DNA from: Heteronotia binoei
Lineage: Eukaryota
Assembly (NCBI RefSeq): GCF_032191835.1
Contig: NC_083243.1
Coordinates: forward strand, 101,742,001 to 101,806,000
Direction of reading: 5' to 3'
DNA: 64,000 bases
The notes under the pieces were generated by a model. It had not been told where the DNA came from. It saw only the letters and a list, made by a program, of their open reading frames with translations, and ran no database searches. Below are positions 14,902-54,710 of the stretch, piece after piece; position 1 is the first letter of the stretch, and every line of letters starts with the position of its first letter. The translations under genes and the position numbers were made by a program.

Positions 14902-15197
14902 CTACTTTCCCACCAACTTGCTGAAAACATCATAGACCTCTGGCTTTTCCTGCGCAAACTGCTCCACTGTATTTTTCTGCAGCCAGTCAGATGAACGCAT
15001 TTGCTGCTGTAGAAGGCCAATAAGGTCACCAAGGTTACAGCCAGCAGTGGACACTGGTTCTTGGTGATGGGACACAAAGATCACTTCATCTGTGCTGTCT
15101 GCTTTGCCCTCTGAATCAGACTGACAGGACTGGTCTCTCTCTTCATTCAGGAGTTCATGCTCACGTTGTTCTAGGACCTCACAGACCCTTTGCATTC
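14902..15197 (-). CDS. ACCS: Last coding exon (GMQRVCEVL...VFSKLVGK*), with a C-terminal extension
   Basis: CAG acceptor at 15198; phase matches exon 14; ends in tandem TAG TAG stops. Confidence 0.9.
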
Positions 15198-15359
15198 CTG
15201 CAGATTGGGGGTGGGTGGGAAGAGACACATTGGTTGGATCAAAAACTTGATTTATGCAAAAAGGTGAGGTCCTGAAGATAATGAAGATTCATGTGAGACT
15301 GCTAGTACATCACAGCCAAGTGGGTATCTTGTGGTTATACACCTCCTGAGTCCTGATTT

Positions 15360-15485
15360 AAGAACATAAGAGAAGCCATGTTGGATCAGGCCAATGACCC
15401 ATCCAGTCCAACACTGTGTCACACAGTGGCCAAAAAACTCAAGTGCTATCAGGAGGTCCACCAGTTGGGCCAGGACACTAGAAGC
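15360..15485 (-). mobile_element. CR1 3'-end fragment
   Basis: Matches the CR1 3' ends at 10535 and 23762. Confidence 0.75.
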
Positions 15486-16605
15486 CCTCCCACTGTGCTC
15501 CACTTTAATCCCATACTGCAAACCTGATCTGTATATTCTGAGGAATCGTGATACAGTTTTCCTGGGACTGTATCACATGATCAGCTCTCAAAGGAATTCC
15601 AAGGTGATATGAACTGTGATCCCACAGAAGTGCACAACAGGTTTGCAAAAATGGTCACTTCTCAACAGACTGAAACAATCATGCATGCACCTGTTTTGTT
15701 TCAAGACATAAGTGAAATTGAATAAATTCTGGGATAAAAATGAAAAAAAAATTAAGTATATGGGTTGCAGTTTTGGCTGTCAGAGCTGAAAGAGTGTCAC
15801 AACCCAATAGACAACTGATATCCTGAAGAAAAGGTATTACCAGTTCCTACTCAAAAAGGCAGTGAATCCAGCCACCTAAGATTTTAAGCAGAACCCTGCT
15901 GCATTAGGCCAACAGTGCCTCTAATACAGCACCCTGTTTTCCCCACAGCAGAGCAACATTTCCCCCCCATGCACAGCCCCCTGCCCAGTAACTGGTTTAA
16001 AGAGTCATAATGCCTCTTAACTTATGGCCCCCATGGTCTTTAAGGAAAGTGATACAGCTTTTAATTTAGTCATGCTTTCATGACTGAATAAAAAACTATA
16101 TCACTTCACATTTTTGGTCTTTTCTGTGTATTTTCCAGCTCTATGATACCCTTTTCTGAGATGGGGTGACTGAAGCCATACACACTATTCTAACTGCAGT
16201 CACAGCACATATTTATATGAACACATTCAGATACACACACAATCACAAACATGGATTCCCTAAGCAACATTTCACTGCCTGTGGACTCTCAAGGCTTTTA
16301 AAAAAACTAAATGGCACTTTTTCACTTCTGCCAGCTGGTTTGGATGTAAATACAGCCATGCCAGAATTGGCAGGGAAACGGGCGTCCTGGAAATTAGTGG
16401 TACTCACACACTGGCATGTGGCATCCAGCATCTATGTACAACATCCCACTAGGGATTTTATATACCTGATTTTGTTGCCAATTGGGACTGCAAAAAATAA
16501 TAATCCCACTATCAAGCTCCCAGCAAGTCACACTATGCAAAGGTGTTGGGCTTGGGGAATCATCAGTTGTGAAAGGACAAAGTACAAGATAAATACAGCA
16601 CTGAC

Positions 16606-16759
16606 CTAGCTGCAGCCGATGTGTTTTGTCAGCAAAGATGATGCGGAACCAGCCAGGCTCACTACATTCAAAGGCTTTACCACAGGACAGCAGAATCTTG
16701 TTATCCAGGAAGCGTCTCCAGAGCAGCATTTCCTCCTCAAAGGTACGTCTTTTCAGGTA
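16606..16759 (-). CDS. ACCS: Coding exon 14 (YLKRRTFEEEMLLWRRF...EPGWFRIIFADKTHRLQLG)
   Basis: 154 nt; CAG acceptor and GTCAGT donor; GWFR substrate-carboxylate arginine motif. Confidence 0.96.
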
Positions 16760-17762: not shown

Positions 17763-17905
17763 CTTTCGGAAATCAATCCATACAAAGAAGCCTGCGTTGC
17801 GGTTCAGGAAGGGAACCCCAAGGGTCTTGAGCTCATCTGTCACAAAGGTATGGGCAGCTTTCAGTCTGTCATGGTTAGCCCGTAAGTATACCTGGTTGAT
17901 CCAGT
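17763..17905 (-). CDS. ACCS: Coding exon 13 (DWINQVYLRANHDRL...AGFFVWIDFRK)
   Basis: 143 nt; TAG acceptor and GTCAGT donor; GFFxWxD motif. Confidence 0.96.
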
Positions 17906-18559
17906 CTAGCCAAGAAGAAAAGACTCTTATTAATTTCAACATGCACATACATCACTTGATTTGTTGTCCTTACTTGACCTCATGAACAGACTCCATTAAA
18001 AACCACTGTGCTGAAGATAATGTAAGATAATATGAAAGTTCTGCACATGGTATGTGATTTGACTCCTTTCTATATTTCTGTTATCACCAAGTGAAATAGT
18101 CAATGAGTGATGAACATGATTGTACAAATTTATCCAGCAAGAAGAAAATGGTCAGAACTTTCCTATAATTACCTGATGCCATATGCAGGGTATTACAGGT
18201 CTCTCACTCTACTTTTTGGTGGAGTGGGGCATCAGCAACCCATAATCTATAGCCCTAGTAGCCTCAACTGTTTATGATGCTTGCTACATTTACATGTTGT
18301 TAAAAAGTACACTTTAAAACATTTAATTTGTAAAGAGGCCTAATCAGATCCATCTAGGCAAACACCACAAATTCCTTTTGCCTTGTCGCATCTGGACATA
18401 GTTCACACTTAAAAAATAGGGGGGGGGGGGGCTGACAGTTCCTACACAGTATTGTTAGCCAACTCCATGCATCCTAAGGATTGTAGCAGATGAACAACAG
18501 CAGCTTTAGCAGAGAAGATAAAGTAGAATACTGGGGTCCTGTGACACTCTGTGTCTCAC

Positions 18560-18701
18560 CTCTGTCTCGGAGTAGCTGGGCAATTTTGTACTGGACAGGC
18601 CCACAGACCCCATGGAAGTAACACAAGGAACCAATGGCATTGGCAACATCTTGGTTCTCTGTGTATAGGGTTCCAAAACGAATCCCAGAGACAGCAAAGT
18701 C
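18560..18701 (-). CDS. ACCS: Coding exon 12 (DFAVSGIRFGTLYTENQDV...QLLRDR)
   Basis: 142 nt; AAG acceptor and GTGAGA donor; SG-RFG motif. Confidence 0.96.
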
Positions 18702-18842
18702 CTTTAGGGACAAAAAATATGTAATAATCACATCAACACAACACAAACAAACCCTTTGTTCTAATACATTGTGTTGTTCTCTCTCACACATAGCCCTGGC
18801 CTTTGGGTTGATCCCAACGCTGCACGAGAAAACAGTACACAC

Positions 18843-18888
18843 CTTACTAATTCCCCACATCACATGGGTCCTCTGTGGATCAGGTAAT
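18843..18888 (-). CDS. ACCS: Coding exon 11 (LPDPQRTHVMWGISK), containing the PLP Schiff-base lysine
   Basis: 46 nt; CAG acceptor and GTGTGT donor; the last codon AAG is the conserved S-K lysine. Confidence 0.95.
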
Positions 18889-20530: not shown

Positions 20531-20620
20531 CTGTCCATTTCCAGCACACTATGAAAAGAGGTGGAATCATCAAAAACCGACAGCATGTAGATCTCATCTA
20601 CAATCACATGTAGTTCATAT
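20531..20620 (-). CDS. ACCS: Coding exon 10 (YELHVIVDEIYMLSVFDDSTSFHSVLEMDR)
   Basis: 90 nt; TAG acceptor and GTAAAG donor; DEIY PLP-binding motif. Confidence 0.95.
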
Positions 20621-22162: not shown

Positions 22163-22263
22163 CTTTTTGCAAATTCCAAATATTCAGTAAGCTCTGAGAG
22201 AGAATAGATGTCCCCCAGGGGATTTTGTGGGTTCAGAAGAACTAAAGCCTTCACTTTCACACC
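22163..22263 (-). CDS. ACCS: Coding exon 9 (GVKVKALVLLNPQNPLGDIYSLSELTEYLEFAKR)
   Basis: 101 nt; TAG acceptor and GTATGG donor; NPxNPLG motif. Confidence 0.96.
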
Positions 22264-23320: not shown

Positions 23321-23398
23321 CTCTGACTGTGCATCCTGCAAAGCCTTCTTTAGCTTGTCCACAGTAAGCTGGAAGGGATGAATGCTTGCGCCAGATAC
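23321..23398 (-). CDS. ACCS: Coding exon 8 (VSGASIHPFQLTVDKLKKALQDAQSE)
   Basis: 78 nt; CAG acceptor and GTGAGC donor; FQLTV motif. Confidence 0.95.
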
Positions 23399-23759: not shown

Positions 23760-26700
23760 TAAAAACATAGGAGAAGCCATGTTGGATCAGGCCAATGGCC
23801 CATCCAGTCTAACACTCTGTGTCACACAGTGGCCAAAAAAAAATTGTTTTTGTATTGTGAGAAAGGGAGAAAAGGACTTCTTTCTCTACTTTCTCCATCC
23901 CATGCATTATCCTGTAAACCTTTATCATGTCACCCCGCAGTCGACGTTTCTCCAAGCTAAAGAGCCCCAAGCGTTTTAACCTTTCTTCATAGGGAAAGTG
24001 TTCCAACCCTTTAATCATTCTAGTTGCCCTTTTCTAGACTTTTTCCAATACTATAATATCCTTTTTAGGAGAGCCAGTTTGGTGTAGTGGTTAAGTGTGT
24101 GGACTCTTATCTGGGAGAACCGGGTTTGATTCCTCACTCCTCCACTTGCACCTGCTGGAATGGCTCTGGCAGAGGTTGTCCTTGAAAGGGCAGCTGCTGT
24201 GAGAGCCCTCTCCAGCCCCACCCACCTCACAGGGTGTCTGTTGTGGGGGAGGAAGGTAAAGGAGATTGTGAGCCGCTCTGAGACTCTTTGGAGTGGAGGG
24301 CGGGATATAAATCCAATATCCTCTTCTTCATCTTCTTTTTGAGGTGCGGTGACCAGAATTGCACGCAGTAATCCAAATGAGACCTCACCATCGATTTATA
24401 CCGGGGCATTATGATACTGGCTGATATGTTTTCAATTCCCTTCCTAATAATTCCCAGCATGGCGTTGGCCTTTTTTATTGCAATCGCACACTGTCTTGAA
24501 ATTTTCAGTGAGTTATCTACCACGACCCCAAGATCTCTCTCTTGGTCAGTCTCTGCCAGTTCTCACCCCATCAACTTGTATTTGTAGCTGGGATTCTTGG
24601 CCCCAATATGCATTACTTTGCACTTGGCCACATTGAACCTCACCTGCCACGCTGACGCCCACTCACCCAGCCTCAACATATCCCTTTGGAGTGCCTCACA
24701 ATCCTCTCTGGTTCTCACCACCCTGAACAATTTAGAGTCATCTGCAAACTTGGCCACTTCACTGCTTACTCCCAACTCCAAATCATTTATGAACAAGTTA
24801 AAGAGCATGGGACCCAGTACTGAGCCCTGTGGCACCCCACTGCTTACCTTCCTCCACTGCAAAGACTGCCCATTTATACTCACTCTCTGCTTCCTATTAA
24901 TTAGCCAGTTTTTGATACACAAGAGGACCTGTCCTTTTACTCCATGACTCTCGAGCTTTATAAGGAGCCTTTGATGAGGAATTATCAAAAGCTTTCTGGA
25001 AGTCAAGGTAAACAACATCTATTGGGTCTTCTTTGTCCACATGTTTGTTCACCCCCTCAAAGAAATGCAACAGGTTAGTGAGGCAGGATCTTCCCTTACA
25101 GAACTCATGCTGAGTCTTCCTCAATAACCCGTGTTCATCAATGTGCCTACTCATTCTGTCCTTGATAACTTTCCCGGTATTGAAGTCAGACTGACTGGCC
25201 TGTAATTTCCCAGATCTCCTCTGGAACCCTTTTTAAAGATGGGGGTGACATTTGCTACCTTCCAGTCCTCAGGAACGGAGGCAGATTTCAATGAAAGATT
25301 ACATATTTTTGTCAGAAGATCCACAAGTTCAACTTTGAGTTCGTTCAGAACTCTTGAATGTATGCCATCCGGACCTGGTGACTTATTAGTTTTTAATTCG
25401 TCTATCAGTTGTAGGACCTCCTCTCTTGTCACCTCAATCTGACTCAGGTTTTTCAACACCCCTTCCAAAATTAGTGGTTCTGGAGCGGGCAAACACTTCT
25501 CGTCTTCCACAGTGAAGACGGAGGCAAAAAATGCATTCAGCTTTTCAGCCATTTCCCTATCCTTCAGTAATCCTTTTACTCCTTGGTCATCCAAGGGCCC
25601 CACTGTCTCCCTGGCTGGTTTCCTGCTTCTAATATATTTGAAGTAATTTTTATTGTTGGTCTTTATGTTTTTTTGTAATATGCTCCTCTCAGTCCCTTTT
25701 TGCCTGCCTGATCACAGTGTTGCATTTGATTTGCCACAGCCTGTGTTCCCTTTTTATTAATCTCACTTGGACTAGCTTTCCACCACTTAAATGAGTCCTT
25801 CTTACCTTTTACAGCTTCCATTACTTTGTTAACCATGCAGGCCTTTTCTTATACCTGTTTGTGCCTTTCCAAACTTGTGGTATGTATTTTATCTGAGCTT
25901 CTAGGATTGTAGTTTTAAATAGCCTCCAAGCTTCCCCAAGGGTTTTGACTGTATTTACCTTTCCTTTCAGTTTCCTCTTCACATGCTTCCTCATCTCAGA
26001 GAATTTACCCCTTTTAAAGTTAAACGTGGTTGTGCCAGTCTTTTGGGGCAACTCTCTATTTATACAAATGGTGAAATCAATAACGTTATGGTCACTGCTC
26101 CCAAGCGGTGCGATCACTTTTACATCTCTCACCAAGTCTTAGGCATTACCCCTGGTAGGTTCAGAGACCATCTGCTCCATAGCACAGTCATTGAGAGCAT
26201 CAAGAAACTCAATCTCTTTCTCTCGACCAGAACACATATTGACCCAATCAATCTGCGGGTAGTTAAAATCACCTATTACGACACAGTTTTTACATTTAGC
26301 CGCTATCTTTAAGCCTTCCATCATATTATAATCGTCCTCTATCTTTTGATTTGGTGGGCAATAACAAACTTCTATAGTTAAATTTCCTTTTGGGCCCTCT
26401 ATTTCAACCCAAAGCATTTCTAGAAGGGAATCTAATTCTCTGACCTCAGTCCTACTGGACTGTATACCCTCTCTGACATACAGAGCCACCCCACCTCCAA
26501 CCCTTCCCTCCCTATCCTTCCGATATAACTTATATCCAGGAATCACCGTGTCCCACTGATTCTCCTCATTCCACCAAGTTTCTGAAATTCCCACAATGTC
26601 TATGTTTTCTCCCAACACTAAACATTCCAACTCACCAATTTTACTTCAAACACTTCTAGCATTTGCATACAAACATCTATAATTTCCCAGGCAAGCTAGG

Positions 26701-27960
26701 CCCGCAACCTTCCTCCTGCCGCTTCGAGACTTTGGCAGACAGTCCATACTGTTTGTCACCATCTCAGTGGACAACTCTGATTCATTACCCAGTAGAAAAG
26801 TAACAGCTAACCCTTCATCTCTTTGAGATGAGTCCTCCCAAACCAGAGACATTTCATCTCCTGTCGGCTTTCCCCCAAGATTTAGTTTAAAAACTGCTCT
26901 GCCACCTTTTTGATTTTAAGCACCAGCAGCCTGGTTCCATCTGGGGACAAGTGGGGACCATCTCTTTTGTACAGCTCCTGCTTGTTCCAGAAAGCATCCC
27001 AGTGCCTAACAAACTTAAACCCTTCCTCCTTACACCATCGTCTCATCCACACATTGAGACTTCTAATTTGTGCCTGCCCTGCACGTGGAAGCGCTTCTGA
27101 GAAGGTCCTGGCCTTAAGTCTTCCGCCTAGCAGCCTAAATTTTTCCTCCAGGCCTCACGACTGCATTTCCCCACATCATTGGTGCCAACATGCACCACAA
27201 CCACTGGCTCCTCCCCAGCACTGTCTATCAGCCTATCTACTACACGCGTAATGTCTGCTACCTTTGCACCAGGCAGGCAAGTCACCATACGGTCAGTACG
27301 CAGTTTTGCCACCCAGCTGTCTATTTGCCCAAGGATCGAATCACCAACTACCAAGACCCCCCCCCCCTCTCTCCCCACCCAGGGATGGTTCCTTGGTGCG
27401 AAAGGATTCCCACTCACCAACTGAAGAAGAGGTCCCTTCTGAGGGCGCATTCCCCTTATCCTCAGCACAGTGCCCTGTTCCCTCTCGACCCTCATGCTCC
27501 CTGGCAGCAATGGGGCTGCCACATTCAGAGCGGGGCTCATATAGTACGTCCCCGAGAGTCTTCCCCAAGTGTCTAATTGACTGTCTCTGCTTCTCCAGGT
27601 CAGTCACCTCAGCCTCAAGGGTACGAACTTGTTCCCTGAGGACCAGGAGCTCCTTGCAGCGAGCACGCACCCAAGACTTCTGTCCTGTGGGCAGATAGTC
27701 ATACATGTGACACTCAGTGCAAAACACTGGAAAGCCCCCACCCCCCTGCTGGCATTCTACCTTTATGATAGCTTTTTTAAAATATACAGTCCCCTTTTAA
27801 GTAGGTACAATCCCTGTTTCAATTCACTATACAGTCCCCTTGTAATATACAATCCCTGTTTCAACTCACTCTACTTAGTTGATTTTTCATTTACCCTCTT
27901 GAGTAACTTGGAACTGGAAGCATTCCAGCTTGAAGCTAGAATAGTTCTACTGACCAGCTC
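23760..27960 (-). mobile_element. Near full-length CR1 LINE (ORF1 zinc finger/coiled coil/SGNH esterase; ORF2 EN-RT), frameshifted
   Basis: ORF1: FCTECHMY, VLVVGDSI and VVHVGTNDV. ORF2: CLYANARS, GISETWW, GDFNYP, YLDFQKAFD and FADDSKL. The 5' boundary is approximate. Confidence 0.92.
24067..24335 (+). mobile_element. tRNA-derived SINE (Squam3-like, L2-type tail) nested in the CR1 3' region
   Basis: A box TGGTGTAGTGG, B-box-like GGTTTGATTCC, tail GAGGGCGGGATATAAAT. The CR1 sequence resumes on both sides. Confidence 0.85.
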
Positions 27961-29968: not shown

Positions 29969-30066
29969 CTGACTGTCTAAATGGGCATAGACCAGCTTGA
30001 CATTCCCGTAGAGAAACACACTGTGAGTGATACCCCCATAGAATGGGGTAGCAATCAGGAAGGCTT
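29969..30066 (-). CDS. ACCS: Coding exon 7 (EAFLIATPFYGGITHSVFLYGNVKLVYAHLDSQ)
   Basis: 98 nt; CAG acceptor and GTAAGC donor; class I/II aminotransferase P-x-Y motif. Confidence 0.95.
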
Positions 30067-32298: not shown

Positions 32299-32365
32299 CC
32301 CCAGGATCACAGAGGACTGTAGCTAAAGCAGAAAACAGAGAGCCACAGCCATTCTGCACAATTAC
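32299..32365 (-). CDS. ACCS: Coding exon 6 (VIVQNGCGSLFSALATVLCDPG)
   Basis: 67 nt; CAG acceptor and GTAAGT donor; PLP phosphate-binding loop region. Confidence 0.95.
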
Positions 32366-33899: not shown

Positions 33900-33969
33900 A
33901 TTTTCCGCTTTCAGAGGTGCAGGTGCCTTGCAGTAATATGTCAAAAATCGAGCTACTTCCTCCCGCAAG
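33900..33969 (-). CDS. ACCS: Coding exon 5 (FLREEVARFLTYYCKAPAPLKAEN)
   Basis: 70 nt; CAG acceptor and GTAGGT donor; phase matches the neighbouring exons. Confidence 0.93.
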
Positions 33970-36355: not shown

Positions 36356-36426
36356 AACATATGCCCTTTCCAGTCAGGATACTGTAGCAGTGGGGGCTCA
36401 ATGACATTCATGTCGCTTTGTGTTAG
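36356..36426 (-). CDS. ACCS: Coding exon 4 (LTQSDMNVIEPPLLQYPDWKGHM)
   Basis: 71 nt; AG acceptor and GTAAGT donor; ACCS QY-DW-GH motif. Not reported by the ORF track. Confidence 0.93.
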
Positions 36427-41524: not shown

Positions 41525-41660
41525 TAGTAGCTAGATTCAGGTCAGTAGCTTTGTTGGTCTGAAGAAGCAGAACAAAGTTTGAGTCCAGTGGCACCTTTAA
41601 GACAAAATTTTATTCAAGGTATAAGATTTTGTATGCAAACACGCTTCTTCAGATAAACTA
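41525..41660. mobile_element. Penelope-type terminal-repeat fragment
   Basis: GAGTCCAGTGGCACCTTTAAGAC motif; reverse-complement match to 50455-50510. Family assigned from memory. Confidence 0.5.
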
Positions 41661-41770
41661 GTAACTGTCTATAGTCTTTTAGTTTTATACAGGAAGCAGC
41701 AACAAACTCAATAGTGGCCAGCTCTGCTTAGGAAGGAAGGGGTGCATTCTGCATTTAGAATAACACTTAC

Positions 41771-41830
41771 CCGCTTCGACATCAGATCAAAGCACAGTTT
41801 GTTCTCACTGGTGCCAAAATTAATGATGCC
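41771..41830 (-). CDS. ACCS: Coding exon 3 (GIINFGTSENKLCFDLMSKR)
   Basis: 60 nt; AG acceptor and GTAAGT donor; conserved ACS-family GxxENxL motif. Confidence 0.95.
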
Positions 41831-42707
41831 CTTGAAACAGAGACAAAAAGAAATGTTTAAGAAAAAACCCTGGATCCTTCTGCCATGAAAAGGATCAATA
41901 TACTCCAAGTTACATTAACAAGAGAATTTAAAATCAAATTATTTGCATATATTTGATGTTTAAAAATCCCTTTTCCAAAGTGCTTACTGGATCGACCCAG
42001 CACTTAATATAATCCTTTCATTCATATAGCAAGTGTTATACAACACTCATTTTTGAAGGATTTAATTTTTCAGATGACAATTTTGACATACCACCTAGCA
42101 TGAAATACAGAGTAGTTGTTTATTGCTAGGTAATTACATGAGATGGGCCTCAGTTGTAATTCGCAAGGACCAAATGTTTGTTTCTCAGTCAATTATATTC
42201 CATATCGTTCATGTATAGTCATGTACAGAAGTTTTGTTTTTCAGTGTTGGCATATTAGTTTATATGCATCTTCACATCAGAGGCAACAGCATAGTTTCAT
42301 CATCACCTTTCCACATCATTTACTTACTCATATCACTTTGTTCCTTTTGTACCTGTTCTCCTCCCAATCCTCCTTTTCTTAAGCTTTTGGTTTTTACCAT
42401 GTGCAGCTCAATTATGTTTACTAATCCCACTAAGCTCAATGAGGATTACTCCCAAGTAAGTGTATCATAGTCCAAAATCTCAACTCTTACCTTGAATAGA
42501 AATAAAATCTAAGCATGGGTCACTGTATTTGCTCACATTTTTCTCCTGTTAGCTTTGCTGCTCTGTTTCCTGCATTATCTACCCACAATTTAACAGTTAT
42601 AATGCAAGCTCGTAGGAGTAGGGTTTTTTGCTGGGGGTGGTGGTGGTTATAATAGTACAGTGTCACGGAGTAAATAATCATTTAAAATTTAGAAGACCTT
42701 CACTCAC

Positions 42708-43312
42708 ATTGGGATTTTTGTCTTCATCATACTTGTCAGCATGATAGGCCTTGTATCCTTCTTCTGTGGATCCATGGAAGATGCTTGCAATATTGCCTCG
42801 GAGAGAAAGGTACGGGCTGCTTTGGAAATCACCAATGTTACAGAAACTGTACACATTGGTTGTCCTGTCCAAGGGAGGCTGCCCTAACTGTGTGGTCCTT
42901 ATTTCCTGTTGGCCTCCTGATGTGCCAGAAAAGGCCTGGCTAAAGTCCACTCCTTGGGACAGCACAGTTGTAGAGGGGCCGCTATTGTTCTGTTTTAAGA
43001 TGCTGAGCATCTGAGCAAAGACACTGAACATGCGAAACTCATGCTCCCGTTCCAGTTCAAAGCGCCGCTGCTCCAGCTGTATCCGCCGTTCCTCCACCTC
43101 TAGATCTCGCTGCAATCGTCTTTCTTCCATTTGCAGAAAGCGTTCTTCCATTTCCCGCTGTGCTGTCAAGGTCTTCACCAAGAGTTCATCAAGTGGGTCC
43201 TTCAGCCGTTGGGCTTTCCGTTTCTTCCTCAAGCGGTGCAAGGTAGAAAAACCAGGCCGTGGCCCCAGACTTTGGATCCTGGATGAAGAAGCCATGTTAG
43301 GCTCACTTAAAC
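42708..43312 (-). CDS. ACCS: Coding exon 2: basic NLS-like motif, E/R-rich coiled coil, linker and the start of the ACCS domain (YLSLRG...YDEDKNPN)
   Basis: Acceptor TTATAG after a polypyrimidine tract at 43313; 605-nt open exon; donor AAT|GTGAGT at 42707. The 3' end matches the ACCS N-terminal motif (human YLSSRG...YDEDKNPS). Confidence 0.93.
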
Positions 43313-44294
43313 CTATAAGTAAAAAGAGAAAGGGAAATTACCTATACCAATTTCTTTAGATCCCCATTTTGGCAAAGGCCAAGTTTACATTAAAAGTTAA
43401 CTAGCTTCAGGCCGCCCACAGAATCTCAAGTTTAAGCTCACTTCTAGACAACTACTGAATGTTTCCTTCAGTACTTTGAAAAGTACAATGATGGTTCTGA
43501 GGCTTGGTGAGTGCCACATCCTCTTTTCTTCTCTTAATTTACAGGAGATGGCCGTGGTGTCTCAGGAATGAAGGAAAGGTAATCTTCAAATGCTCAAAGA
43601 CATATTTACTGAAAGCAGACCTTCAGTCACAATTATAAACAATTCCAGATAATGGGTTACAAAGAGCCTCCTTCAAGTTCTAGAGACCTGTAACAAATTC
43701 TGTACTGACTCCAATAAGTACTTGCCAGGGTCAGCCTTACTTAGCTTCTGAGATCAGGCTTGCCTTAATAAATTCTGTTTCTGTGATCTCATGTTGCAAT
43801 CTTCCTTTGAAATTTCTCTATAAGAGAAATGCCATTCTTAGGTCAGCAATAGAATGTCCTAGCAGATTAAAATGTTTTCCAGGGGCTTCTCAGTACTGTG
43901 ATTTCTAATGTCAGATTTATATCCATTTATCCATTTGTCACAGGCCTGTTTGTCCAAGAGGTATATAACTTAGAACACTCCGTGAGAGCTTTAACTAATA
44001 CATATATTGAAAATAAAATTTTAAACCACATTATTTCTCACATATTAATGAATTATTTTACAGTTCATTTGACAATATACAATGTTTTTCTTCATTTGTA
44101 GGACCTCCTGAAGTCCAATGCAGGTGTGATTGCAGTTCCCAAACTGGTGTGGCTGCAACTGGACTGCTGCTTTCATCCACTTTCAGAGAATCCTCCTTCA
44201 GGCAGCTCACCAAGGGACTGGCATGTCACAACATAATTTTTTTCCAGTTAACAATATATTAAATTTCATTTTTTCTAGAGTCTTATTCAAGGTA

Positions 44295-44595
44295 AAAAGG
44301 TAAAGGTAGTCCCCTGTGCAAGCACCAGTCGTTTCCGACTCTATTGTGACGTTGCTTTCACATTTTGACGGCAGACTTTTTATGGGGGGGGTTGCCATTG
44401 CCTTCCCCAGTCATCTACACTTTCCCCCCAGCAAGCTGGGTACTGATTTTACTGACCTCAGAAGGATGGAAGGTTGAGTCAACGTAGAGCAGGCTACCTG
44501 AACCCAGCTTCCACTGGAATCGAACTCAGGTCATGAGCAGGGAGCTCAGACTGCAGTACTGCAGCTTTACCACGCTGCGCCACGGGGCTCTTTAG
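44295..44595 (-). mobile_element. Sauria SINE (Squam1), near full length
   Basis: (ACCTTT)n tail read on the plus strand as AAGGTAAAGGT; 13-bp TSD CTTATTCAAGGTA at 44282-44294 and 44596-44608. Confidence 0.88.
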
Positions 44596-47500
44596 CTTAT
44601 TCAAGGTACTCCCATATATAGTCACTACAATTTCAATTTTGGCACGGCTCAATTTTGGCAATGTTTAAGTTATATACCTTACTCATACCTGTGAGCTCTC
44701 TGGTTTCACATGTTTGTCCAAGAGAGCAGAAATAGGTAAGGGTTAGGCTAAAAACATAAATATAGTCTGAGGGTTTCTTTCTTTTGTATGCAATATACAG
44801 TAAATTATTTAGAAAACCAGAAGAGGAACTAACCCCTTGTGAACTCAGGTTCATATTAAACTGTAACACAACATTCTCGCAGATAATCAGAAGAAGGCTT
44901 CATCTCATCCTTATAATTGTGCCTAAGCTTTATCTAAAGAAAAGCTTTCTTTGTTGATTCAAAACAGCATTGAAAATGCAGTTCATTTCCACATAAATAA
45001 ATGTTTGTCAAAGAACCATCTTGTTTCATGAAGTCTACAGTGCCTCACCCATCACATAAAACAGTTTCTCTCCCACCAACTATTTTCAGTGTTTGCCACC
45101 CAGTCGGTCTGTACTGATCAATATCCCTAAAAAAAAAAAGATGTTGGGGTTTTTTTAATCTCAGTGTCAAAAGTAAGAAAAAAGCCCCTTCACAATATGT
45201 CAAACAATCTTGCTGGAACTTCTTAACATTTTAACAAAGGCTCTGAGTATTCAGATACTCTTCTAGACTTGGGATGAACAAACAGGAAGCTTGCTCTATA
45301 ACAGACTACATGACCTTTACTTCTTGTACACATTCACGTATTTCAATGAAAATACTGTTGAAGCAACAGCAGCTGGAGTATAAAATGAATGTTATTTACT
45401 TACTCTATTACAGATGTCTCTCACTGACCTTGAATTCTAATCCAACATCTTTATGAGATCATAAGCCACTAACCACAAAGTCCAAAAATGACACAAACAA
45501 ATTTCACTTCTGCATTTGTGGTTTTAGACTGTCGTTTCCCTTGCATCATGTGTCTTACATGTAAGGTAATTCTAAGAATGTCGAAATTCTGTGAACAAAG
45601 GTCTGCCTCAAAGCTATTTGCAAGCTCAAAAGAAGGAATGCATTGCTGCATAGTACTTTGAAAGCCCTTCCCCCTGCCCAAAGACATCCAATAAATGCAC
45701 TATGGCTTCAGACCACAATGGGATATTAGTTTATCAAAGAAAAGTCCTTTAACTCCTTGGGAAGAAGGGTGGACAGGAAAGCATAAGACCTCAGAATATG
45801 AGTCAGCATAGTGAATACTGCTTCTGTATAGAAAATGTAGCTTTGAGAAAATTCTGAATGTTCTAGGCAGAAAGCAGCAAGGGAGGTCTTGGAATAAAAA
45901 GATCTGCAGAAGGGTAATATGTCTAATTAGTCCCATTACTTGCTTTCAAAGAGCAAGTGGACATTCCTTGAGAATATACAGGTGCTTGCTAGGAGAGGAA
46001 TAAACTTCTCCCTGACCTCTCATAGAGCTTTTTCTTGACTGAACCAGCAGGCAGAGAGACAATCCTCCTCAGCCCTTCCCCACAAAGAGATGTGAGGCTA
46101 TCAATAGAGTTGTAGCAGCCAAAATCATGAAGTTTTTTGGCACTCAAAGACTAACAGGTTTATTACAGTACAACAATAAATCCCCTGCTTTTCAAGAAGA
46201 CGCAAGAGTTGTTTTTATTTTTTCTGTAACAATTACACCTTTGGAATCTCACCTCACTAGTTTTCTTACTGCCTAGTGCCTTTCTGACAGGGGCTTTAAA
46301 ACTTCATTATGTGCTCCTGAAGCCCATTTGAAGTGTTTGCTTCCAAACTTAAGACATGATGGGACTGCCAGTCACAATTTGTCTTTGGTCCAGTCTATGT
46401 GCCTTTGAGGGCAAAAAAACAAAACAAAACACATAGTCACATTTGAAAGAGGAATAGGCTGTTCCTTACATCCAGCAGAAAAGTCATGTGGAAAACTGGA
46501 CTACACATTTCAGCGGCAGCAGGGATAAGGCAGCACATGCAGACATTATTTTAAATGGCCTTCATGCAACAAAAACAACAGTAGCCCATGCTTAAATGAT
46601 ACAGATAATCAAACAATGGCTGCTTCCTTTCCTGAGGAACACTATGGCCCTATGTGGGATAACTGCTGAAAGTCAGCAGCCAGCAAGCACCAAATTGATT
46701 GATTTTTAGATGCCAGAAAGACTCCTCCTTGTCCTGGTTGCTTCAGGGATACTAATAATCCCCCCCATCTCTTATTTGGAATCTTCTGCAGGTTGCTAGA
46801 GAGCTAACACATATATTTCCTAAGTAAATAAACTCAATATGCCTTGTCATATGTGTTGCTGATCACTCACTTGCGTTCTACAAGTCATAAAAGGAATGTC
46901 TCCTGGGCACACCCTCATGGCTTAAGGCACACGTGGATGGGGGGAGATGAGGACAGGCACTGGTCTGATAATATGGTTTCCTGGTTTCTAGTTTTGAACT
47001 GGACAGTCCAGTATTATCACTTTCGGTCCAGTAAACATTTATATGTCCAGTAATGTCCAGAAAACACTGGACATATAAATGTCCATTATTTTATGATTAA
47101 GTCGGCCTGCAATCAAGTTCTGTGCATGTGCTCTTTCTTTATTCTGGGACTTGATAAAGTGGTGACACTCCCATTTGCTTGTTTTCCATCACAGCCAGTA
47201 AGGTCTGACAAGAATCAGATCCACCCTTCAGCAGCAAGGCAAGACTGAGGAAAGTTGGAAAGACTTTCATGGCCAACCAATTAGCTTCCTGTGTTGGTTC
47301 CACGTGTTTATGGGAGTAGAGGGTAGCAGGATTGAATTTTCTAAAGGAAAGTGAAAAAAGAAACCTTGTGGGGTTCATGCTGGGGGGAGGGGAGGCTGTA
47401 GAATTTGGAGGAAGCAAGTCACGCAGAGGGCAGCATTTGGACAGGGTGCCTACCTGCATTTTATCTTTTGCACAGCTATGCATGCACTTTATTGCTATTA

Positions 47501-51226: not shown

Positions 51227-51249
51227 ACTCTTATTCTTTTCTCCTGCTA

Positions 51250-51365: not shown

Positions 51366-51394
51366 TTTCTCCTGCTACAGACAGACTAACTCAT

Positions 51395-51656
51395 ACCGAT
51401 TTTGCATACAGCTTACCCCACGGTCACATTCCTCTTCTCTGCGCAGTGTCCGTCAGATTTCCCACTATCTGCGCCAGGGTTACAGGAAGTGTCGCGGCTT
51501 TCACATAGCAAACGTAAACCGCTTAAACCCAGTTTACATTTGCTACGCAAAAGCCACAGCACGTCCTGTAACTCTGGCGCAGATAGTGGGAAATCCGACG
51601 GACGCTGCACAGAGAAGAGGAACGTGACCGTGGGGTAAGCTGTGTGCGAAATCGGT
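51395..51656. repeat. 262-bp imperfect palindrome (fold-back MITE)
   Basis: Arms of about 125 bp (ACCGATTTTGCATACAGCTTACCCCACGG... and ...CCGTGGGGTAAGCTGTGTGCGAAATCGGT) around a ~12-nt loop. Confidence 0.9.
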
Positions 51657-53628
51657 CATAGTTACCCATCTTGATCTGATTCCTTTCATGTTATGCAATG
51701 CAACTCCCACAATCATCTCGAGGCTGGTGGCCAATGATGAGACTCCACAAACAAGGTACCTTTGCATCCATTGCCAACAGTATGGGGGCAGGGGGTTTCT
51801 TGAGATGACATCGGCCAGTCAGGATGTTCAGATTCCTTTCATGGTTGGTACTGCAACCCCACAATCATCCAGAAGCTGTTGGCCAATTTTTAGGCCCCTA
51901 GCTTTATTTTCCGGTAAGTTATGTGTGCCGTGGACAAATGGACATCTCCTTTTACAAAGAATATAATATAAAGAACATAATAAAATACCTCTAGGCTTAT
52001 TTTGCTTTTGAATCCAGCCTTTTACCGTAAGCTGCTTCAATATCACTGTTGCCTTATCCTTGAATTATAAGTAGTCAGCCAACACATTTTTCCAGAAACT
52101 GACAAAATCTATTTTTCTAGTGCAGATACTAGATGTGGGCTGGTAGAGGACAATACCAGGTGCTGCTGGGCACCTGCTTTCCATATTTGGGCTGAAGAGG
52201 TGAAGTTGAGTGCTACTATGTATGTGCCCTCCCCCCTCTGCTACACTGTGCCCATATTGGCACAGGATGAAGCCAGATCCCCCTGGTCCCCCTCAGTGGC
52301 CACACCTTGCCCCAACTGCCTCTAGACAAGCTAGCTCCTCCTTGCTAGCCACACAGCGCCCTGACTAGCAGGGCAGAGATGGATCCCATCATCTGCACAC
52401 TCCTCCTCCTCCTCAGCTGCACCACACACAGATCAGTGCAGACTGGAGCTGGGGACTTCAGTGCACCTCCTCACTAGCCACACTGCACTCAAGCTGACAG
52501 TGGACAAAGCTGGGCACCTATCATCCCCGTGTTCTTCCTCACTAGCCACACTGTACCTGAACTGCCAGTGCAAAGGGCAATGCTGTGACTATGCTCCACC
52601 TCCTCAGCTGAATTTCACCAGGGCCAGCAAAGGGGAAAGCTCTTCCTTGCCAACTGCATCCAGGCCCATATAGAAGGCCATTGCTGTGCCCACGCCCCTC
52701 CTCATGGACAAGTTCAATACTGGGCTGTTTTAATGAAGAACAAAGCTCTAGGCTGCCTTGTTCCTTCTTGTCAGGCACCCCACATCTAGTCTGGCAGGGA
52801 AAAGTCAGGTACCACTGTGCCCATGCTCCTCCTTCCCCAGCCACCCTACACCAAGGCTGGTATTCAGTTGGGTGCTACAGTATGCACCACAGTATGTACC
52901 ACCACACTCGGATCTGTGCAACATGAAGATGAGAGCCCCCAACTTCCTCCTCAGTGACCACATTGTGTCCCAGTTGCCACTGGGCACAGCTGGCACCAAC
53001 ACACTCCTGCTGGCTGGGCTGTTGAGGTGAAGCTGGGTGCCATGACATCCATGCCCTCCTCAGCTGCACTGTGCCCAGATCAGCACAGAGTGAAGCTGGG
53101 TGCCACTCCTTCCATGCCCCTCCTCCTCAGCTGGTTGCCTTTATGGCAGCACTGCAACTGGGCTGGCACAGGATGAGGTCAGCCAGCAATGTGCTCCTCA
53201 CCAGCAGCACCTAGGCTGTGTTCCAAGCCAGGCAGTGCCAGTGGACTTGGTATACTCTTCCTTGCTGGCCACACTTTGCCTATGCTGGGGAAGCAAAAGT
53301 GGGCATCACTGTTTGTGTACTTCTTGCTGGCCACACAGTGCCCAAACTGCCAGTGGAGGAAGCTGGGTGCTGCCATGCCTATGCTGCTCCATGCTAGCCA
53401 TGGCAGGTCTGGGCTGGCAATACAAAGCTGGGCACTGCCTAGTCTATGCTTCTGCTCCCCAGCTGCATGGCACCCAGGGTGGCACAGGATAAAGCCAGGC
53501 AACCAACTGCTTCTCTTTACTAGCTGCACCCATGCTCCTCCTTGCTAGTTTTACCACGCCCAAATCAGGACAAAGCTGGGCACCATCTAGTTCATCCTTG
53601 TCAGCCACTCTACATTCAGGTTGGTGGG

Positions 53629-53787
53629 CAGGGCTGGCCCTAGACTGTCTGGCACTCTAGGCAAAGCTAATTTCTGGTGCTCCCCCTGATAATGTCACTG
53701 AGTCACATGGGGTGTCCAATTTGATGCCCCCCAGAAGGCAGGCACCTAGGGAATTGCCTAGTCTGCCTAGTGGCAGGGTCGGCCCTG
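53629..53787. mobile_element. hAT MITE
   Basis: TIRs CAGGGCTGGCCCT and AGGGTCGGCCCTG; TSD TTGGTGGG / CTGGTGGG (7/8). Confidence 0.85.
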
Positions 53788-54067
53788 CTGGTGGGACAAA
53801 GCCAGGCTGCACCTCACTCAGATGAGCACAGGGTGAAGCTGGGCCCCTCCATTCCAGCCATGCTCACACCATGCCTGGATAAGCACAAGGTGAAGCTACC
53901 CAGACTGCAGGGTGGAGCAGGGACATCTGGGGCAGGCACTCTTCTGAGACAGCAGTCCACTGGAATTTTGCCCAGATTTAAAAAGAAAAAAAAACCAAAA
54001 TCCATTCCTGGTGGAACCTTTCAGAAGGGCAGAGGAGAGGTTGGCACTTGGGACCAGACAGTCCTAC

Positions 54068-54710
54068 CTGAAGGTGAGACACTGGTCTCAACGGGAATCT
54101 CCACCCTGGAGATGGGAGAGTCATTCTGGGACCTATCCAGAAAGGCCCTTTCTATTTCCGGCTCCTCAGCAGAGCCCACCTGCTGGTAAGGGAGAGAGGG
54201 CAGAGGCTCAGGCGTCAAGCAGTGCTCTTCGGAATCCACCTCCTCGCACTTGATCTCCATCAGCTCTGCGGGCTGAGAATGGCGGAAGGGCATCGCGGAG
54301 GGGTCCAAGTGGTGATGGTAGTTTTCGACCATATTTCCTTGGAGCACTTGTTGAGCCGTCAGGCTGCTGCTGTTGGAGGCGCTGTAAGCCAGGGAAGGTC
54401 GGCTGGCTAGGACCCGATCCATCACGTCGTAAAACTTCCAGGTCCTGCCTCCGCGGGGGGCCTTGTTGTTGTCCTTGATGCGACGGTACTCCAGCTTCAT
54501 TTTCTTGATCTTCTCCCGACACTGGTCGCCGGTCCGGTGGATGCCCTTGTCCCGCAGCACCTCAGCGATCCGGTTGAAGACGTGCTGGTTCCTCAGGCAG
54601 CTCTCCAGCTCCGCCTGCACGGACTCGTCCGCCCACAGGTGCAGCAGCTCCACCACCTCCGGATCTGACCAGTTACTGCCCCGTTCGTACTTCTTGCCTC
54701 GGAAATCCAT
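54068..54710 (-). CDS. ACCS: ACCS-fusion gene coding exon 1: Myb/SANT-like (trihelix, Myb_DNA-bind_4-type) DNA-binding domain plus linker
   Basis: ATG at 54710 in a perfect Kozak context (GCCGCCATGG). Encodes MDFRGKKYERGSNWSDPEVVELLHLW...RTGDQCREKIKKMKLEY...WKFYDVMDRVL, the W/W/C trihelix pattern. Ends at donor CAG|GTAGGA (54068/54067), phase 1, in frame with the acceptor at 43312. That this exon is spliced to ACCS is inferred from frame and splice sites. Confidence 0.85.

What the first reader, a model, noticed from the sequence alone, without database searches (positions are those of the whole stretch)
14902..54710. Trihelix DNA-binding domain plus coiled coil fused to an ACC-synthase-like PLP enzyme: a candidate metabolite-sensing transcription factor in a vertebrate
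Seen in sequence: 15 exons join through canonical splice sites, in frame, into one 887-aa ORF. Layout: Myb/SANT-like trihelix domain (about aa 11-102), NLS-like RLRKKRKAQR (241-250), coiled coil (about 255-320), ACCS aminotransferase fold (about 382-790), then a C-terminal extension. The Myb exon has a perfect Kozak ATG inside the locus's CpG island, and its phase-1 donor matches the phase of the next acceptor. Established knowledge: human ACCS (about 500 aa) has no DNA-binding domain, lacks ACC synthase activity and has no known physiological role. Bacterial MocR/GabR regulators pair an N-terminal DNA-binding domain with a fold-type-I PLP domain that senses amino-acid ligands. Inference: this protein may be a convergent animal equivalent, a nuclear PLP- or amino-acid-responsive regulator whose DNA-binding module was lost in mammals. 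I recall that some non-mammalian ACCS models are much longer than human, so the architecture may already exist as an automatic annotation. I know of no functional characterisation of it.
Basis: partly seen in the sequence, partly recalled or inferred. Interest (0 to 1): 0.92.

Follow-up and report, generated by a model that had tools for sequence, protein, structure and literature searches.

The report
Gecko ACCS gene with Myb domain
This is an intact squamate (gecko-like) copy of the vertebrate ACCS gene, whose full-length product joins a very conserved Myb/SANT-like DNA-binding domain and a coiled coil to a vitamin-B6 (PLP) enzyme fold; public gene models already show this layout from sharks to marsupials, but I found no paper on what it does.

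Summary
On the minus strand, 15 GT-AG exons (54710 to 14902) join in frame into an 887-aa ORF. It reads PF13837 Myb/SANT-like domain (aa 12-99), basic cluster RLRKKRKAQR, one long helix, ACC-synthase-like PLP fold, then a conserved C-terminal motif.

It is not a new architecture. The same fusion is the standard RefSeq model "ACCS-like protein 1" in cartilaginous fishes, coelacanth, lungfish, ray-finned fishes, amphibians, turtles, crocodilians, birds, squamates, monotremes and marsupials. The model here is 93% identical to the Eublepharis protein. The Myb part was therefore lost at most in placentals, not in mammals as a whole.

The Myb domain is the best conserved part: 91-92% identity between gecko and shark, against 65-67% for the enzyme fold. 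Against a close relative it shows 12 synonymous and 0 non-synonymous changes. cDNA-sized contigs from other species carry the fusion as one ORF.

In this species I did not see the exon 1-to-exon 2 junction directly. RNA contigs hold both exons. One contig joins exon 2 to a different, untranslatable upstream exon, which predicts a 667-aa form without the Myb domain.

The idea of a metabolite-sensing regulator is plausible and untested. All PLP-binding residues are kept, and a catalytic Tyr of plant ACC synthase is an invariant Trp.

The parts
54500..55499 (.). CpG island covering the start of exon 1 and the presumed promoter
   Evidence: GC 0.56-0.60 and CpG o/e 0.78-0.83, against 0.33 for the whole window
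54068..54710 (-). Exon 1 (aa 1-214, ends in phase 1): start codon in gccgccATGg context, Myb/SANT-like domain, acidic/Ser-Pro linker
   Evidence: dN/dS 0.116 against a close relative
54414..54677 (-). Myb_DNA-bind_4 (trihelix-type) domain, aa 12-99
   Evidence: PF13837 E 7.5e-22. 0 non-synonymous and 12 synonymous changes over aa 1-102. 91-92% identical to sharks. The fold is nearest to the GT-1 and Sap1 DNA-binding domains
45404..45524 (-). Alternative upstream exon (the 5' limit is not known; the contig ends at 45524) spliced to the exon 2 acceptor. It ends in TAA TAG, in the frame that continues into exon 2, so it is untranslated leader
   Evidence: RNA contig record 8 of run X2 joins 43310/43312 to 45402/45404; the donor is AGA|GTAAGT
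42708..43312 (-). Exon 2 (aa 215-416): junction residues, NLS-like cluster, coiled coil, linker and the first ACCS-homologous residues, all in one exon
   Evidence: The exon 2-3 joint is seen in RNA
43293..43295 (-). Internal ATG (Met221, aacATGg), the predicted start of a 667-aa Myb-less isoform
   Evidence: The Met is not conserved; it is Val in Eublepharis and turtles
43206..43235 (-). Basic cluster RLRKKRKAQR (aa 241-250), NLS-like
   Evidence: A basic cluster is kept in all orthologues aligned
42990..43196 (-). Long helix / coiled coil, about aa 254-322
   Evidence: Single helix 254-322 in the AlphaFold2 model of orthologue P0258, pLDDT 80-87. 72% identical to sharks
41771..41830 (-). Exon 3 (aa 417-436), carries Glu425 of the SENK motif
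   Evidence: The joint to exon 2 is seen in runs X1 and X21
36356..36426 (-). Exon 4 (aa 437-459), carries Trp455 at the position of the plant ACS catalytic Tyr
33900..33969 (-). Exon 5 (aa 460-483)
32299..32365 (-). Exon 6 (aa 484-505)
29969..30066 (-). Exon 7 (aa 506-538), carries Tyr515
23321..23398 (-). Exon 8 (aa 539-564)
22163..22263 (-). Exon 9 (aa 565-597), carries Asn578 of NPQNPLG
20531..20620 (-). Exon 10 (aa 598-627), carries Asp606 and Tyr609 of VDEIY
18843..18888 (-). Exon 11 (aa 628-643), ends with the PLP Schiff-base lysine Lys643 (AAG at 18845-18843)
18560..18701 (-). Exon 12 (aa 644-690), carries Arg651
17763..17905 (-). Exon 13 (aa 691-738)
16606..16759 (-). Exon 14 (aa 739-789), carries Arg777 of GWFRI
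14902..15197 (-). Exon 15 (aa 790-887 plus the TAG stop)
14905..15033 (-). Conserved C-terminal motif LGDLIGLLQQQMRSSDWLQKNTVEQFAQEKPEVYDVFSKLVGK (aa 845-887), no Pfam family
   Evidence: Conserved from sharks to birds. No Pfam hit. Predicted helical at low confidence

Best explanation
**Shown**
- This is the single-copy ACCS gene of a gecko-like squamate, named "1-aminocyclopropane-1-carboxylate synthase-like protein 1" in RefSeq.
- Its conserved full-length coding form has five parts in order:
  - an N-terminal Myb/SANT-like, trihelix-type domain;
  - a disordered linker with a basic, NLS-like cluster;
  - a helix of about 70 residues, probably a coiled coil;
  - a fold-type-I PLP domain whose closest solved relatives are plant ACC synthases;
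  - a conserved helical motif of 43 aa at the C-terminus.
- The fusion dates at least to the common ancestor of jawed vertebrates. It is kept in every major lineage sampled; no placental protein turned up in the searches.
- The Myb domain is under the strongest constraint of all the parts.
- A second 5' exon, joined to exon 2 in RNA of this species, predicts a 667-aa isoform that starts at Met221 and lacks the Myb domain.

**Inferred mechanism**
- The full-length protein enters the nucleus.
- It dimerises through the aminotransferase fold, which is an obligate dimer in this fold type, and through the coiled coil.
- It binds DNA through two trihelix domains.
- It thereby places a PLP- and amino-acid-binding pocket on chromatin.
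- I favour a regulatory role in which occupancy of the PLP pocket changes the protein's output at its target sites, over a role as a plain metabolic enzyme. Three things point that way. The DNA-binding part is far more constrained than the pocket. The catalytic Tyr of plant ACS is an invariant Trp. The human homologue lacks ACC synthase activity.

The confidence given is for the gene's identity, its architecture and the general "DNA-tethered PLP domain" reading. The specific ligand-sensing step alone I put at about 0.3.
For: **Gene model and domains**
- 15 GT-AG exons give 887 aa.
- PF13837 matches at E 7.5e-22.
- PF00155 and plant ACS 1IAX (E 1.6e-67) match through the Eublepharis orthologue, which is 95% identical to the model in the enzyme fold.

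**Conservation across species**
- The model is collinear with, and 93% identical to, Eublepharis isoform X1 over 887 aa.
- All but three of the 120 proteins listed are PF13837+PF00155 fusions; the three exceptions are short proteins of 405-461 aa carrying PF13837 only. The list runs from chimaera and sharks to monotremes and marsupials.
- The junction residues SPSG|FSEPN are conserved on both sides of the exon 1/2 boundary. Met221 is not conserved, so the 5' end of exon 2 is coding in its own right.
- The coiled coil and the first ACCS residues share one exon.

**Transcripts in other species**
- L004 is a 2829-nt contig with one 852-aa Myb+aminotransferase ORF.
- L001 carries exons 1-4 and 6-15 with no introns.

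**Selection on exon 1**
- Against a 94%-identical relative, the exon 1 CDS differs by 6.4% with no indels. The flanks differ by 15% with indels.
- ω is 0.116 overall. In the Myb domain there are 12 synonymous and 0 non-synonymous changes.
- Gecko-to-shark identity is 91-92% for the Myb domain, 72% for the coil and 65-67% for the enzyme fold.

**Active-site residues**
- Lys643, Asp606, Tyr609, Asn578, Arg651, Arg777 and Glu425 are invariant in 17 taxa. Trp455 is invariant at the plant catalytic Tyr position.

**This species and this genome**
- The genome has a single ACCS locus.
- RNA contigs of the same species hold exon 1 (0.89 and 0.68 of sampled words) and exon 2 (0.61 and 0.68). Intron bins have zero depth.

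**Fold of the Myb domain**
- The top structural matches are the DNA-binding domains of Sap1 and GT-1.
- GT-1 is also the only PDB sequence hit below E 0.01.
Against: - The exon 1-to-exon 2 junction was not observed in RNA of this species.
- The only upstream partner of exon 2 that I could see is a different, non-coding exon. The Myb-less isoform may therefore be the main one in the tissues sampled.
- That exon lies outside any CpG island. It could be an internal "poison" exon between exons 1 and 2. That would truncate the protein after the Myb domain.
- DNA binding, nuclear localisation, PLP binding and any ligand effect are untested.
- The Foldseek matches are weak (E about 0.1).
- All PLP-contact residues are intact, which fits an active enzyme as well as it fits a sensor.
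Confidence: 0.6

Rival explanations
1. The protein is a chromatin-tethered enzyme rather than a sensor. The PLP domain is catalytically active on a still unknown amino-acid-like substrate. The Myb domain, NLS and coiled coil only deliver that activity to the nucleus or to particular loci, and the Myb-less isoform does the same chemistry elsewhere.
For: - All PLP-contact and substrate-carboxylate residues are invariant over more than 400 million years.
- The enzyme fold is itself well conserved, at 65-95% identity.
- An alternative 5' exon gives a form without the targeting module, as is common for dual-localised enzymes.
- From the literature: the title of Koch et al. 2001, cited in PMC2748086, states that the human homologue lacks ACC synthase activity. 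From my memory of that paper, not checked here, the protein binds PLP and turns over L-vinylglycine.
Against: - No physiological substrate is known for any vertebrate ACCS.
- The Tyr needed for plant ACS catalysis is replaced by Trp in all 17 taxa aligned.
- Constraint is strongest on the DNA-binding part, not on the pocket.
Confidence: 0.3
2. The Myb/SANT-like domain does not read DNA sequence. It works like a SANT domain, or like a Harbinger Myb-like protein, as a protein or histone-tail interaction module. ACCS would then be a subunit or cofactor of a chromatin complex rather than a transcription factor in its own right.
For: - PF13837 belongs to the SANT/Myb/trihelix group, whose members bind DNA, proteins or both (PMC9392472).
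- Similarity to solved DNA-binding domains is weak: E 5e-4 by sequence and E about 0.1 by fold.
- The genome holds at least 45 dispersed PF13837 ORFs, which points to a transposon-related family.
Against: - The best sequence and fold matches, GT-1 and Sap1, are sequence-specific DNA binders.
- The putative recognition helix is rich in invariant basic residues: K67, K69, K70, K72, R76, K79.
Confidence: 0.12
3. The fusion is a modelling artefact in this species. Exon 1 would belong to a separate small Myb gene, ending by read-through 15 codons into intron 1 or in the 45404 exon. ACCS would be made only from Met221.
For: - The one RNA contig that crosses the exon 2 acceptor joins it to the non-coding exon at 45404, not to exon 1.
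- Several squamate database models start at Met221, for example Sphaerodactylus, Varanus and Elgaria.
- Some Ensembl-derived entries list the Myb exon alone.
Against: - The phases match, and the residues flanking the junction are conserved.
- Met221 is absent in Eublepharis, turtles, snakes and sharks.
- cDNA contigs and RefSeq isoform X1 models carry the fusion in geckos and in all other major lineages.
- Exon 1 and exon 2 occur in the same RNA runs.
- The X1 contig stops exactly at the acceptor 43312. That is what a branch in the assembly graph would produce, so there is likely more than one upstream partner.
Confidence: 0.05

Closest known systems
RefSeq "1-aminocyclopropane-1-carboxylate synthase-like protein 1" of non-placental vertebrates (e.g. 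Eublepharis macularius isoform X1, 886 aa; Protopterus XP_043938093.1; Astyanax XP_007228200.3 / UniProt W5LE42)
   Same: Same gene. It has the same order of five parts and the same exon 1/2 junction residues. Identity to the Eublepharis protein is 93% over the full length. It is single-copy in this genome.
   Different: Nothing substantive differs. This species has a Met at position 221 and an alternative 5' exon that could give a Myb-less form. All of these models are automatic predictions without functional study.
Human ACCS (PHACS) and ACCSL
   Same: They share a homologous PLP fold with the same motifs: SENK, NPxNPLG, DEIY, SK, GWFR. The human protein lacks ACC synthase activity (Koch et al. 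2001, Gene 272:75, as cited in PMC2748086).
   Different: From my own knowledge, the human proteins are about 500 and 570 aa and have no PF13837 domain. No placental fusion appeared among the hits, whereas monotremes and marsupials have it. I did not compare human sequences here.
Plant ACC synthases (tomato ACS2 1IAX, apple 1B8G/1M7Y, Arabidopsis ACS7 7DLW)
   Same: They are the closest solved structures, E 1.6e-67 to 1e-60 over about 400 residues. The PLP lysine and the Asp, Tyr, Asn and Arg contacts are all conserved.
   Different: The plant enzymes have no DNA-binding domain, coiled coil or C-terminal motif. The active-site Tyr contributed by the partner subunit (apple Y85, tomato Y92) is Trp in all vertebrate sequences aligned.
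Bacterial MocR/GabR/PdxR regulators
   Same: The layout logic is the same: an N-terminal DNA-binding domain, a linker, and a fold-type-I PLP domain that dimerises. This makes the idea of effector-controlled DNA binding reasonable.
   Different: The DNA-binding fold differs (GntR-type winged helix there, Myb/trihelix here). The PLP domain here is of the ACS subfamily, and a coiled coil and a C-terminal motif are added. There is no evidence of common descent and no functional data. This is analogy, not membership.
Trihelix / Myb_DNA-bind_4 proteins (Arabidopsis GT-1; Harbinger Myb-like proteins and their domesticated vertebrate derivatives NAIF1 and the MSANTD genes)
   Same: Same Pfam family. 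The helix pattern H16-26, H29-37, H42-54, H61-80 resembles GT-1, with a basic cluster and a coiled coil following the domain. Domestication events in this family are dated to the base of jawed vertebrates (PMC9392472), which is also the minimum age of this fusion.
   Different: The domain is fused to an enzyme fold. ACCS is not mentioned among the Harbinger-derived genes in that paper. I did not show a transposon origin.

Membership tests
Vertebrate ACCS orthologue group (ACCS-like protein 1) | Fold-type-I PLP domain of the ACC-synthase subfamily | tested here: met
   Exons 2-15 align to ACCS orthologues. The Eublepharis orthologue, 95% identical to the model in the enzyme fold, hits PF00155 at E 6.7e-59 and 1IAX at E 1.6e-67.
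Vertebrate ACCS orthologue group (ACCS-like protein 1) | Full-length collinearity with annotated orthologues, including the N-terminal PF13837 domain and the C-terminal motif | tested here: met
   93% identity over aa 1-887 to Eublepharis isoform X1, and 73% to the monotreme models.
Vertebrate ACCS orthologue group (ACCS-like protein 1) | Single orthologous locus in the genome | tested here: met
   The search of the window's own genome found the aminotransferase exons only at this locus. The first-look filter was stricter than usual, so weak copies could be missed.
Vertebrate ACCS orthologue group (ACCS-like protein 1) | Exon 1 spliced to exon 2 in mRNA of this species | tested here: inconclusive
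   Both exons are present in the same RNA runs. The junction was not displayed, and an alternative exon is joined to exon 2 in run X2.
Myb_DNA-bind_4 / trihelix DNA-binding domains | Match to PF13837 above the gathering score | tested here: met
   78 bits against a cut-off of 27, E 7.5e-22, profile positions 2-88 of 89.
Myb_DNA-bind_4 / trihelix DNA-binding domains | Helical bundle resembling solved trihelix DNA-binding domains | tested here: met
   The AlphaFold2 model has mean pLDDT 74, with blocks of 81-91 over aa 21-80. Foldseek's top hits are the Sap1 and GT-1 DNA-binding domains, probability 0.98-1.00 but E about 0.1, TM 0.5-0.69. GT-1 is also a sequence hit at E 5e-4.
Myb_DNA-bind_4 / trihelix DNA-binding domains | Sequence-specific DNA binding | not testable with these tools
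   Needs SELEX, PBM, EMSA or CUT&RUN.
MocR/GabR-type PLP-dependent transcription regulators | N-terminal GntR-type winged helix-turn-helix domain | tested here: not met
   Pfam finds only PF13837 (plus a sub-threshold MADF match) in the N-terminal part.
MocR/GabR-type PLP-dependent transcription regulators | C-terminal fold-type-I aminotransferase-like domain with the PLP lysine | tested here: met
   PF00155 matches, and Lys643 is invariant.
MocR/GabR-type PLP-dependent transcription regulators | Effector-dependent (PLP or amino-acid) change in DNA binding or transcription | not testable with these tools
Functional ACC synthase (EC 4.4.1.14) | Complete catalytic set, including the Tyr from the partner subunit (apple Y85, tomato Y92) | tested here: not met
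   The DYHG motif of the plant enzymes aligns to DWKG here. Trp455 is invariant in 17 vertebrate sequences; the other catalytic residues are present.

The most novel reading that the evidence does not exclude
Jawed vertebrates ancestrally possess a nuclear regulator in which a PLP/amino-acid-binding pocket of the ACC-synthase family is wired to a trihelix DNA-binding domain. That would make it an animal counterpart, by convergence, of bacterial MocR/GabR regulators, coupling vitamin-B6 or amino-acid (possibly SAM-related) status directly to transcription. It would have been overlooked because placental mammals kept only the enzyme-like part.
Probability: 0.3. Interest if true: 0.8.

Novelty: already known. 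Interest (0 to 1): 0.42.

Why it matters
The gene and its two-domain layout are already in RefSeq and UniProt for well over a hundred species, so this window adds no new kind of object.

What these analyses bring out is a comparative picture that I did not find discussed in any paper:
- The fusion is at least as old as jawed vertebrates.
- Its DNA-binding domain is more than 90% identical between sharks and geckos, which is more constrained than the enzyme fold.
- It is kept in monotremes and marsupials, but did not appear in any placental protein found here.
- The PLP pocket is intact, but one catalytic residue of plant ACS is always Trp.

Human ACCS is an orphan PLP protein. If its ancestral form is a DNA-bound regulator, then zebrafish, Xenopus or chicken would be the right systems in which to learn its function. 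It would also be the first direct PLP-fold transcription regulator that I know of in animals.

Tried and rejected
- **RNA reads (one call allowed).** I laid them on 41600-47500, the exon 2 side, hoping to read the loose ends at 43312. The loose-end table was filled by a SINE at 44296-44593 with word depths of 50,000-70,000, and 180 rows were not shown. The exon 1 junction could be neither seen nor excluded. In hindsight a shorter stretch without the SINE, or the exon 1 side, would have been better.
- **Junction-spanning ORFs from this species in the protein collection.** None was at least 90% identical to the model. The closest exon 1 contigs (P0001, P0003) are unspliced read-throughs from relatives.
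- **FERM-domain neighbour.** A FERM gene lies head-to-head with ACCS in contig L001, but it is not in this window.
- **The expressed element in intron 1.** Rfam and ARAGORN gave nothing on it. I identified it as a SINE only from its sequence and its target-site duplication.
- **Transposon origin of the Myb domain.** I looked at one dispersed PF13837 paralogue locus (L009). Its ORFs of 150 aa or more showed no transposase domain, so this stays open.
- **Literature.** Seven searches found nothing on the Myb-ACCS fusion.
- **Placental sequences.** I did not fetch or compare any. The statement about placentals rests on their absence from the hit lists and on my own knowledge of the human proteins.

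Full report

Yes. The start of the gene lies on the minus strand at 54710, in the context gccgccATGg. Exon 1 translates to a 214-aa stretch that matches Pfam PF13837 (Myb_DNA-bind_4) at aa 12-99, with E 7.5e-22 and 78 bits against a cut-off of 27.

I ran tblastn with a lungfish and a characid orthologue and then inspected every boundary.
- There are 15 exons, and all introns are GT...AG.
- The CDS is 2664 nt, giving 887 aa, with a TAG stop at 14904-14902.
- Exon 1 (54710-54068) ends in phase 1.
- Exon 2 begins at 43312 behind ...ctttttacttatag, and the join creates Gly215 in frame.
- RLRKKRKAQR is at aa 241-250.
- The 1-kb stretch 54500-55499 is a CpG island, with CpG o/e 0.78-0.83 against 0.33 for the window.

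**2. What is it?**

A search of 1.8 billion representative proteins with exon 1 alone returned full-length proteins that carry both PF13837 and PF00155. RefSeq names them "1-aminocyclopropane-1-carboxylate synthase-like protein 1". Examples are lungfish XP_043938093.1 (963 aa) and Astyanax XP_007228200.3 (UniProt W5LE42, 961 aa), with further models in Chanos and Sinocyclocheilus.

A second search used only the Myb part of a marsupial protein and allowed only long candidates. All but three of the 120 proteins it listed are PF13837+PF00155 fusions; the three exceptions are short proteins of 405-461 aa carrying PF13837 only. The lineages covered are:
- chimaera, sharks and rays;
- coelacanth, lungfish, gar, bowfin and many teleosts;
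- frogs, salamanders and caecilians;
- turtles, crocodilians and birds (one bird cluster has 543 member sequences);
- lizards, geckos and snakes;
- platypus, echidna, Tasmanian devil and Dromiciops.

No placental protein was among these hits or the 85 hits.

The model from this window is 93% identical over its whole length to Eublepharis macularius isoform X1 (886 aa). It is 93% identical to Paroedura and 92% to Sphaerodactylus over the parts those models cover. The window therefore most likely comes from a gecko. The window's own genome (2.63 Gb) contains the aminotransferase exons only at this locus.

**3. Is the fusion one transcript?**

In other species, yes.
- Logan contig L004 (2829 nt) holds a single uninterrupted 852-aa ORF with both domains. 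The orthologous genes have 15 exons, so this contig must derive from spliced mRNA.
- Contig L001 (6153 nt) contains exons 1-4 followed directly by exons 6-15. This is a spliced molecule in which the 70-nt exon 5 is skipped.
- An older Anolis model (XP_008122813.1) joins exon 1 to exon 2 at exactly the residues predicted here.

The sequence itself argues the same way:
- The coiled coil and the first ACCS-homologous residues (SPYLSLRGN...YHADKYDEDKNPN) lie in one exon and one frame.
- The residues on both sides of the exon 1/2 boundary, SPSG|FSEPN, are conserved across jawed vertebrates.
- The Met at 221 is not conserved. It is Val in Eublepharis and turtles, Ala in snakes, Leu in the Tasmanian devil and Ile/Leu/Val in cartilaginous fishes.

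The 5' end of exon 2 is thus conserved as coding sequence that needs an upstream exon.

**4. RNA in this species**

- Three metatranscriptome runs hold exon 1 (0.89, 0.68 and 0.44 of sampled words) and exon 2 (0.61, 0.68 and 0.67). Two are labelled with the same species as the raw RNA-seq runs and one with a relative.
- When laid on 41600-47500, the intron bins away from repeats have zero depth. These contigs therefore reflect RNA, not DNA.
- The exon 2-exon 3 joint (42707/41829) is seen in a contig of X1 and in two raw reads of X21.
- In X2, a 739-nt contig joins the exon 2 acceptor to a different upstream exon. That exon ends at 45404, with donor AGA|GTAAGT, and the contig runs on to 45524.
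- That exon ends ...TAA TAG A in the frame that continues into exon 2, and it carries three tiny upstream ORFs. It is therefore leader sequence. The predicted product starts at Met221 (aacATGg, 43295-43293) and has 667 aa: coiled coil plus enzyme fold, without the Myb domain.
- The exon has no CpG island around it. I cannot tell whether it is an alternative first exon or is spliced in after exon 1.
- In X1, a contig stops exactly at 43312. That is what a branch in the assembly graph would produce, but it proves nothing on its own.
- The loose-end table that should have shown what is attached at 43312 was filled by an abundantly expressed SINE.

The direct junction test for this species remains undone.

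**5. Selection**

A 2.7-kb contig from a close relative (L003, 94% aa identity) aligns to 55453-53875.
- The exon 1 CDS differs at 6.4% of sites and has no indels.
- The upstream flank and intron 1 differ at about 15% and do have indels.
- Nei-Gojobori counts give ω = 0.116 for the whole exon and ω = 0.21 for the linker. In the Myb domain (aa 1-102) there are 12 synonymous and 0 non-synonymous differences.
- Across deep time the Myb domain is the most conserved part of the protein, as the table shows.

| Part | Identity, this model vs chimaera/shark |
|---|---|
| Myb domain | 91-92% |
| Coiled coil | 72% |
| PLP fold | 65-67% |
| Linkers | 14-42% |

- A 43-aa C-terminal motif (LGDLIGLLQQQMRSSDWLQKNT.EQFAQE.PEV..VFSKL) is also conserved from sharks to birds and has no Pfam family.

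**6. Anatomy and likely mechanism**

AlphaFold2 on an alignment of 49 orthologues, with Eublepharis as the first sequence, gives:
- a small helical domain at aa 16-102;
- disorder at 103-252;
- one long helix at 254-322, pLDDT 80-87;
- disorder at 323-375;
- a confident aminotransferase fold;
- disorder at 814-844;
- low-confidence C-terminal helices.

The isolated Myb domain (mean pLDDT 74, blocks of 81-91 over aa 21-80) finds as top PDB matches the DNA-binding domains of fission-yeast Sap1 and Arabidopsis GT-1. The probability is 0.98-1.00, but E is about 0.1. GT-1 is also the only sequence hit in the PDB below E 0.01, at E 5e-4.

The enzyme fold is closest to plant ACC synthases (1IAX E 1.6e-67). 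In 17 vertebrate sequences the Schiff-base Lys643, Asp606, Tyr609, Asn578, Arg651, Arg777 and Glu425 are invariant. The Tyr that plant ACS takes from the partner subunit (DYHG) is an invariant Trp455 (DWKG). The human homologue lacks ACC synthase activity (Koch et al. 2001, cited in PMC2748086).

From this I infer a nuclear, dimeric protein that places an intact PLP/amino-acid pocket on DNA or chromatin. Whether the pocket senses or catalyses cannot be decided here. I lean towards a regulatory role because constraint peaks in the DNA-binding part.

**7. Comparison with known systems and novelty**

The object is a member of the annotated ACCS orthologue group, and all the tests I could run are met. 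It is not a MocR/GabR regulator. The defining GntR-type domain is absent, and the resemblance is one of layout only. It also fails one catalytic criterion of true ACC synthases.

The Myb domain belongs to the SANT/Myb/trihelix group, which includes Harbinger Myb-like proteins. Several of these were domesticated at the base of jawed vertebrates (PMC9392472). ACCS is not mentioned in that paper, and I did not establish a transposon origin.

Seven literature searches found nothing on the fusion. The alternative 5' exon seen in RNA agrees with it.

Noticed in passing
window 44296-44593 (intron 1): A SINE of about 300 bp with a tRNA-like head on the minus strand, flanked by a 13-bp target-site duplication CTTATTCAAGGTA. 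It recalls the squamate 'Sauria' SINE (from memory). Its copies are extremely abundant in RNA runs (summed word depth 50,000-70,000) and swamped the loose-end table. Rfam and ARAGORN do not recognise it.
   Followed up: partly
window 45404-45524 (intron 1, minus strand): A previously unlisted exon spliced to the exon 2 acceptor in an RNA contig of run X2. It carries in-frame TAA TAG and three tiny upstream ORFs, and there is no CpG island around it. Its 5' end and its upstream partner are unknown.
   Followed up: partly
window 23800-27800 (intron 7, minus strand): A LINE with endonuclease (PF03372) and reverse transcriptase (PF00078) ORFs, broken into several frames. Further LINE pieces lie at 81-1511 (endonuclease) and 11331-11975 (reverse transcriptase).
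   Followed up: partly
window 60485-63999 (minus strand, runs off the window end): The pol region of a Ty3/gypsy-type LTR retrotransposon: RT, RNase H, integrase zinc-binding domain, Tf2-1-like SH3 domain and a chromodomain, in three long open frames. I described it only.
   Followed up: partly
window 2559-2795 (minus strand): A remnant of a hAT transposase C-terminal dimerisation domain (PF05699, E 1.4e-5). Neighbouring open frames up to about 4156 have no Pfam hit.
   Followed up: partly
G000, many contigs (e.g. C5:113023322-113023609, locus L009 4784-5290): At least 45 dispersed ORFs with a PF13837 domain, 30-40% identical to ACCS exon 1. Many have the same 171-aa open frame, which suggests a repeat family, perhaps Harbinger-related. 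No transposase domain was found in the ORFs of 150 aa or more at the one locus examined.
   Followed up: partly
L001 (Logan contig SRR27537759_550), 764-2596 and 3001-5594: In another sauropsid-like species, the ACCS cDNA lacks the 70-nt exon 5, which shifts the frame. It is assembled head-to-head with a 610-aa FERM-domain gene, suggesting a bidirectional promoter there. That gene is not within this window.
   Followed up: partly
window 36370-36372 (Trp455): The active-site Tyr of plant ACC synthases (apple Y85, tomato Y92) is an invariant Trp in all 17 vertebrate ACCS sequences aligned. This may explain the missing ACC synthase activity.
   Followed up: partly
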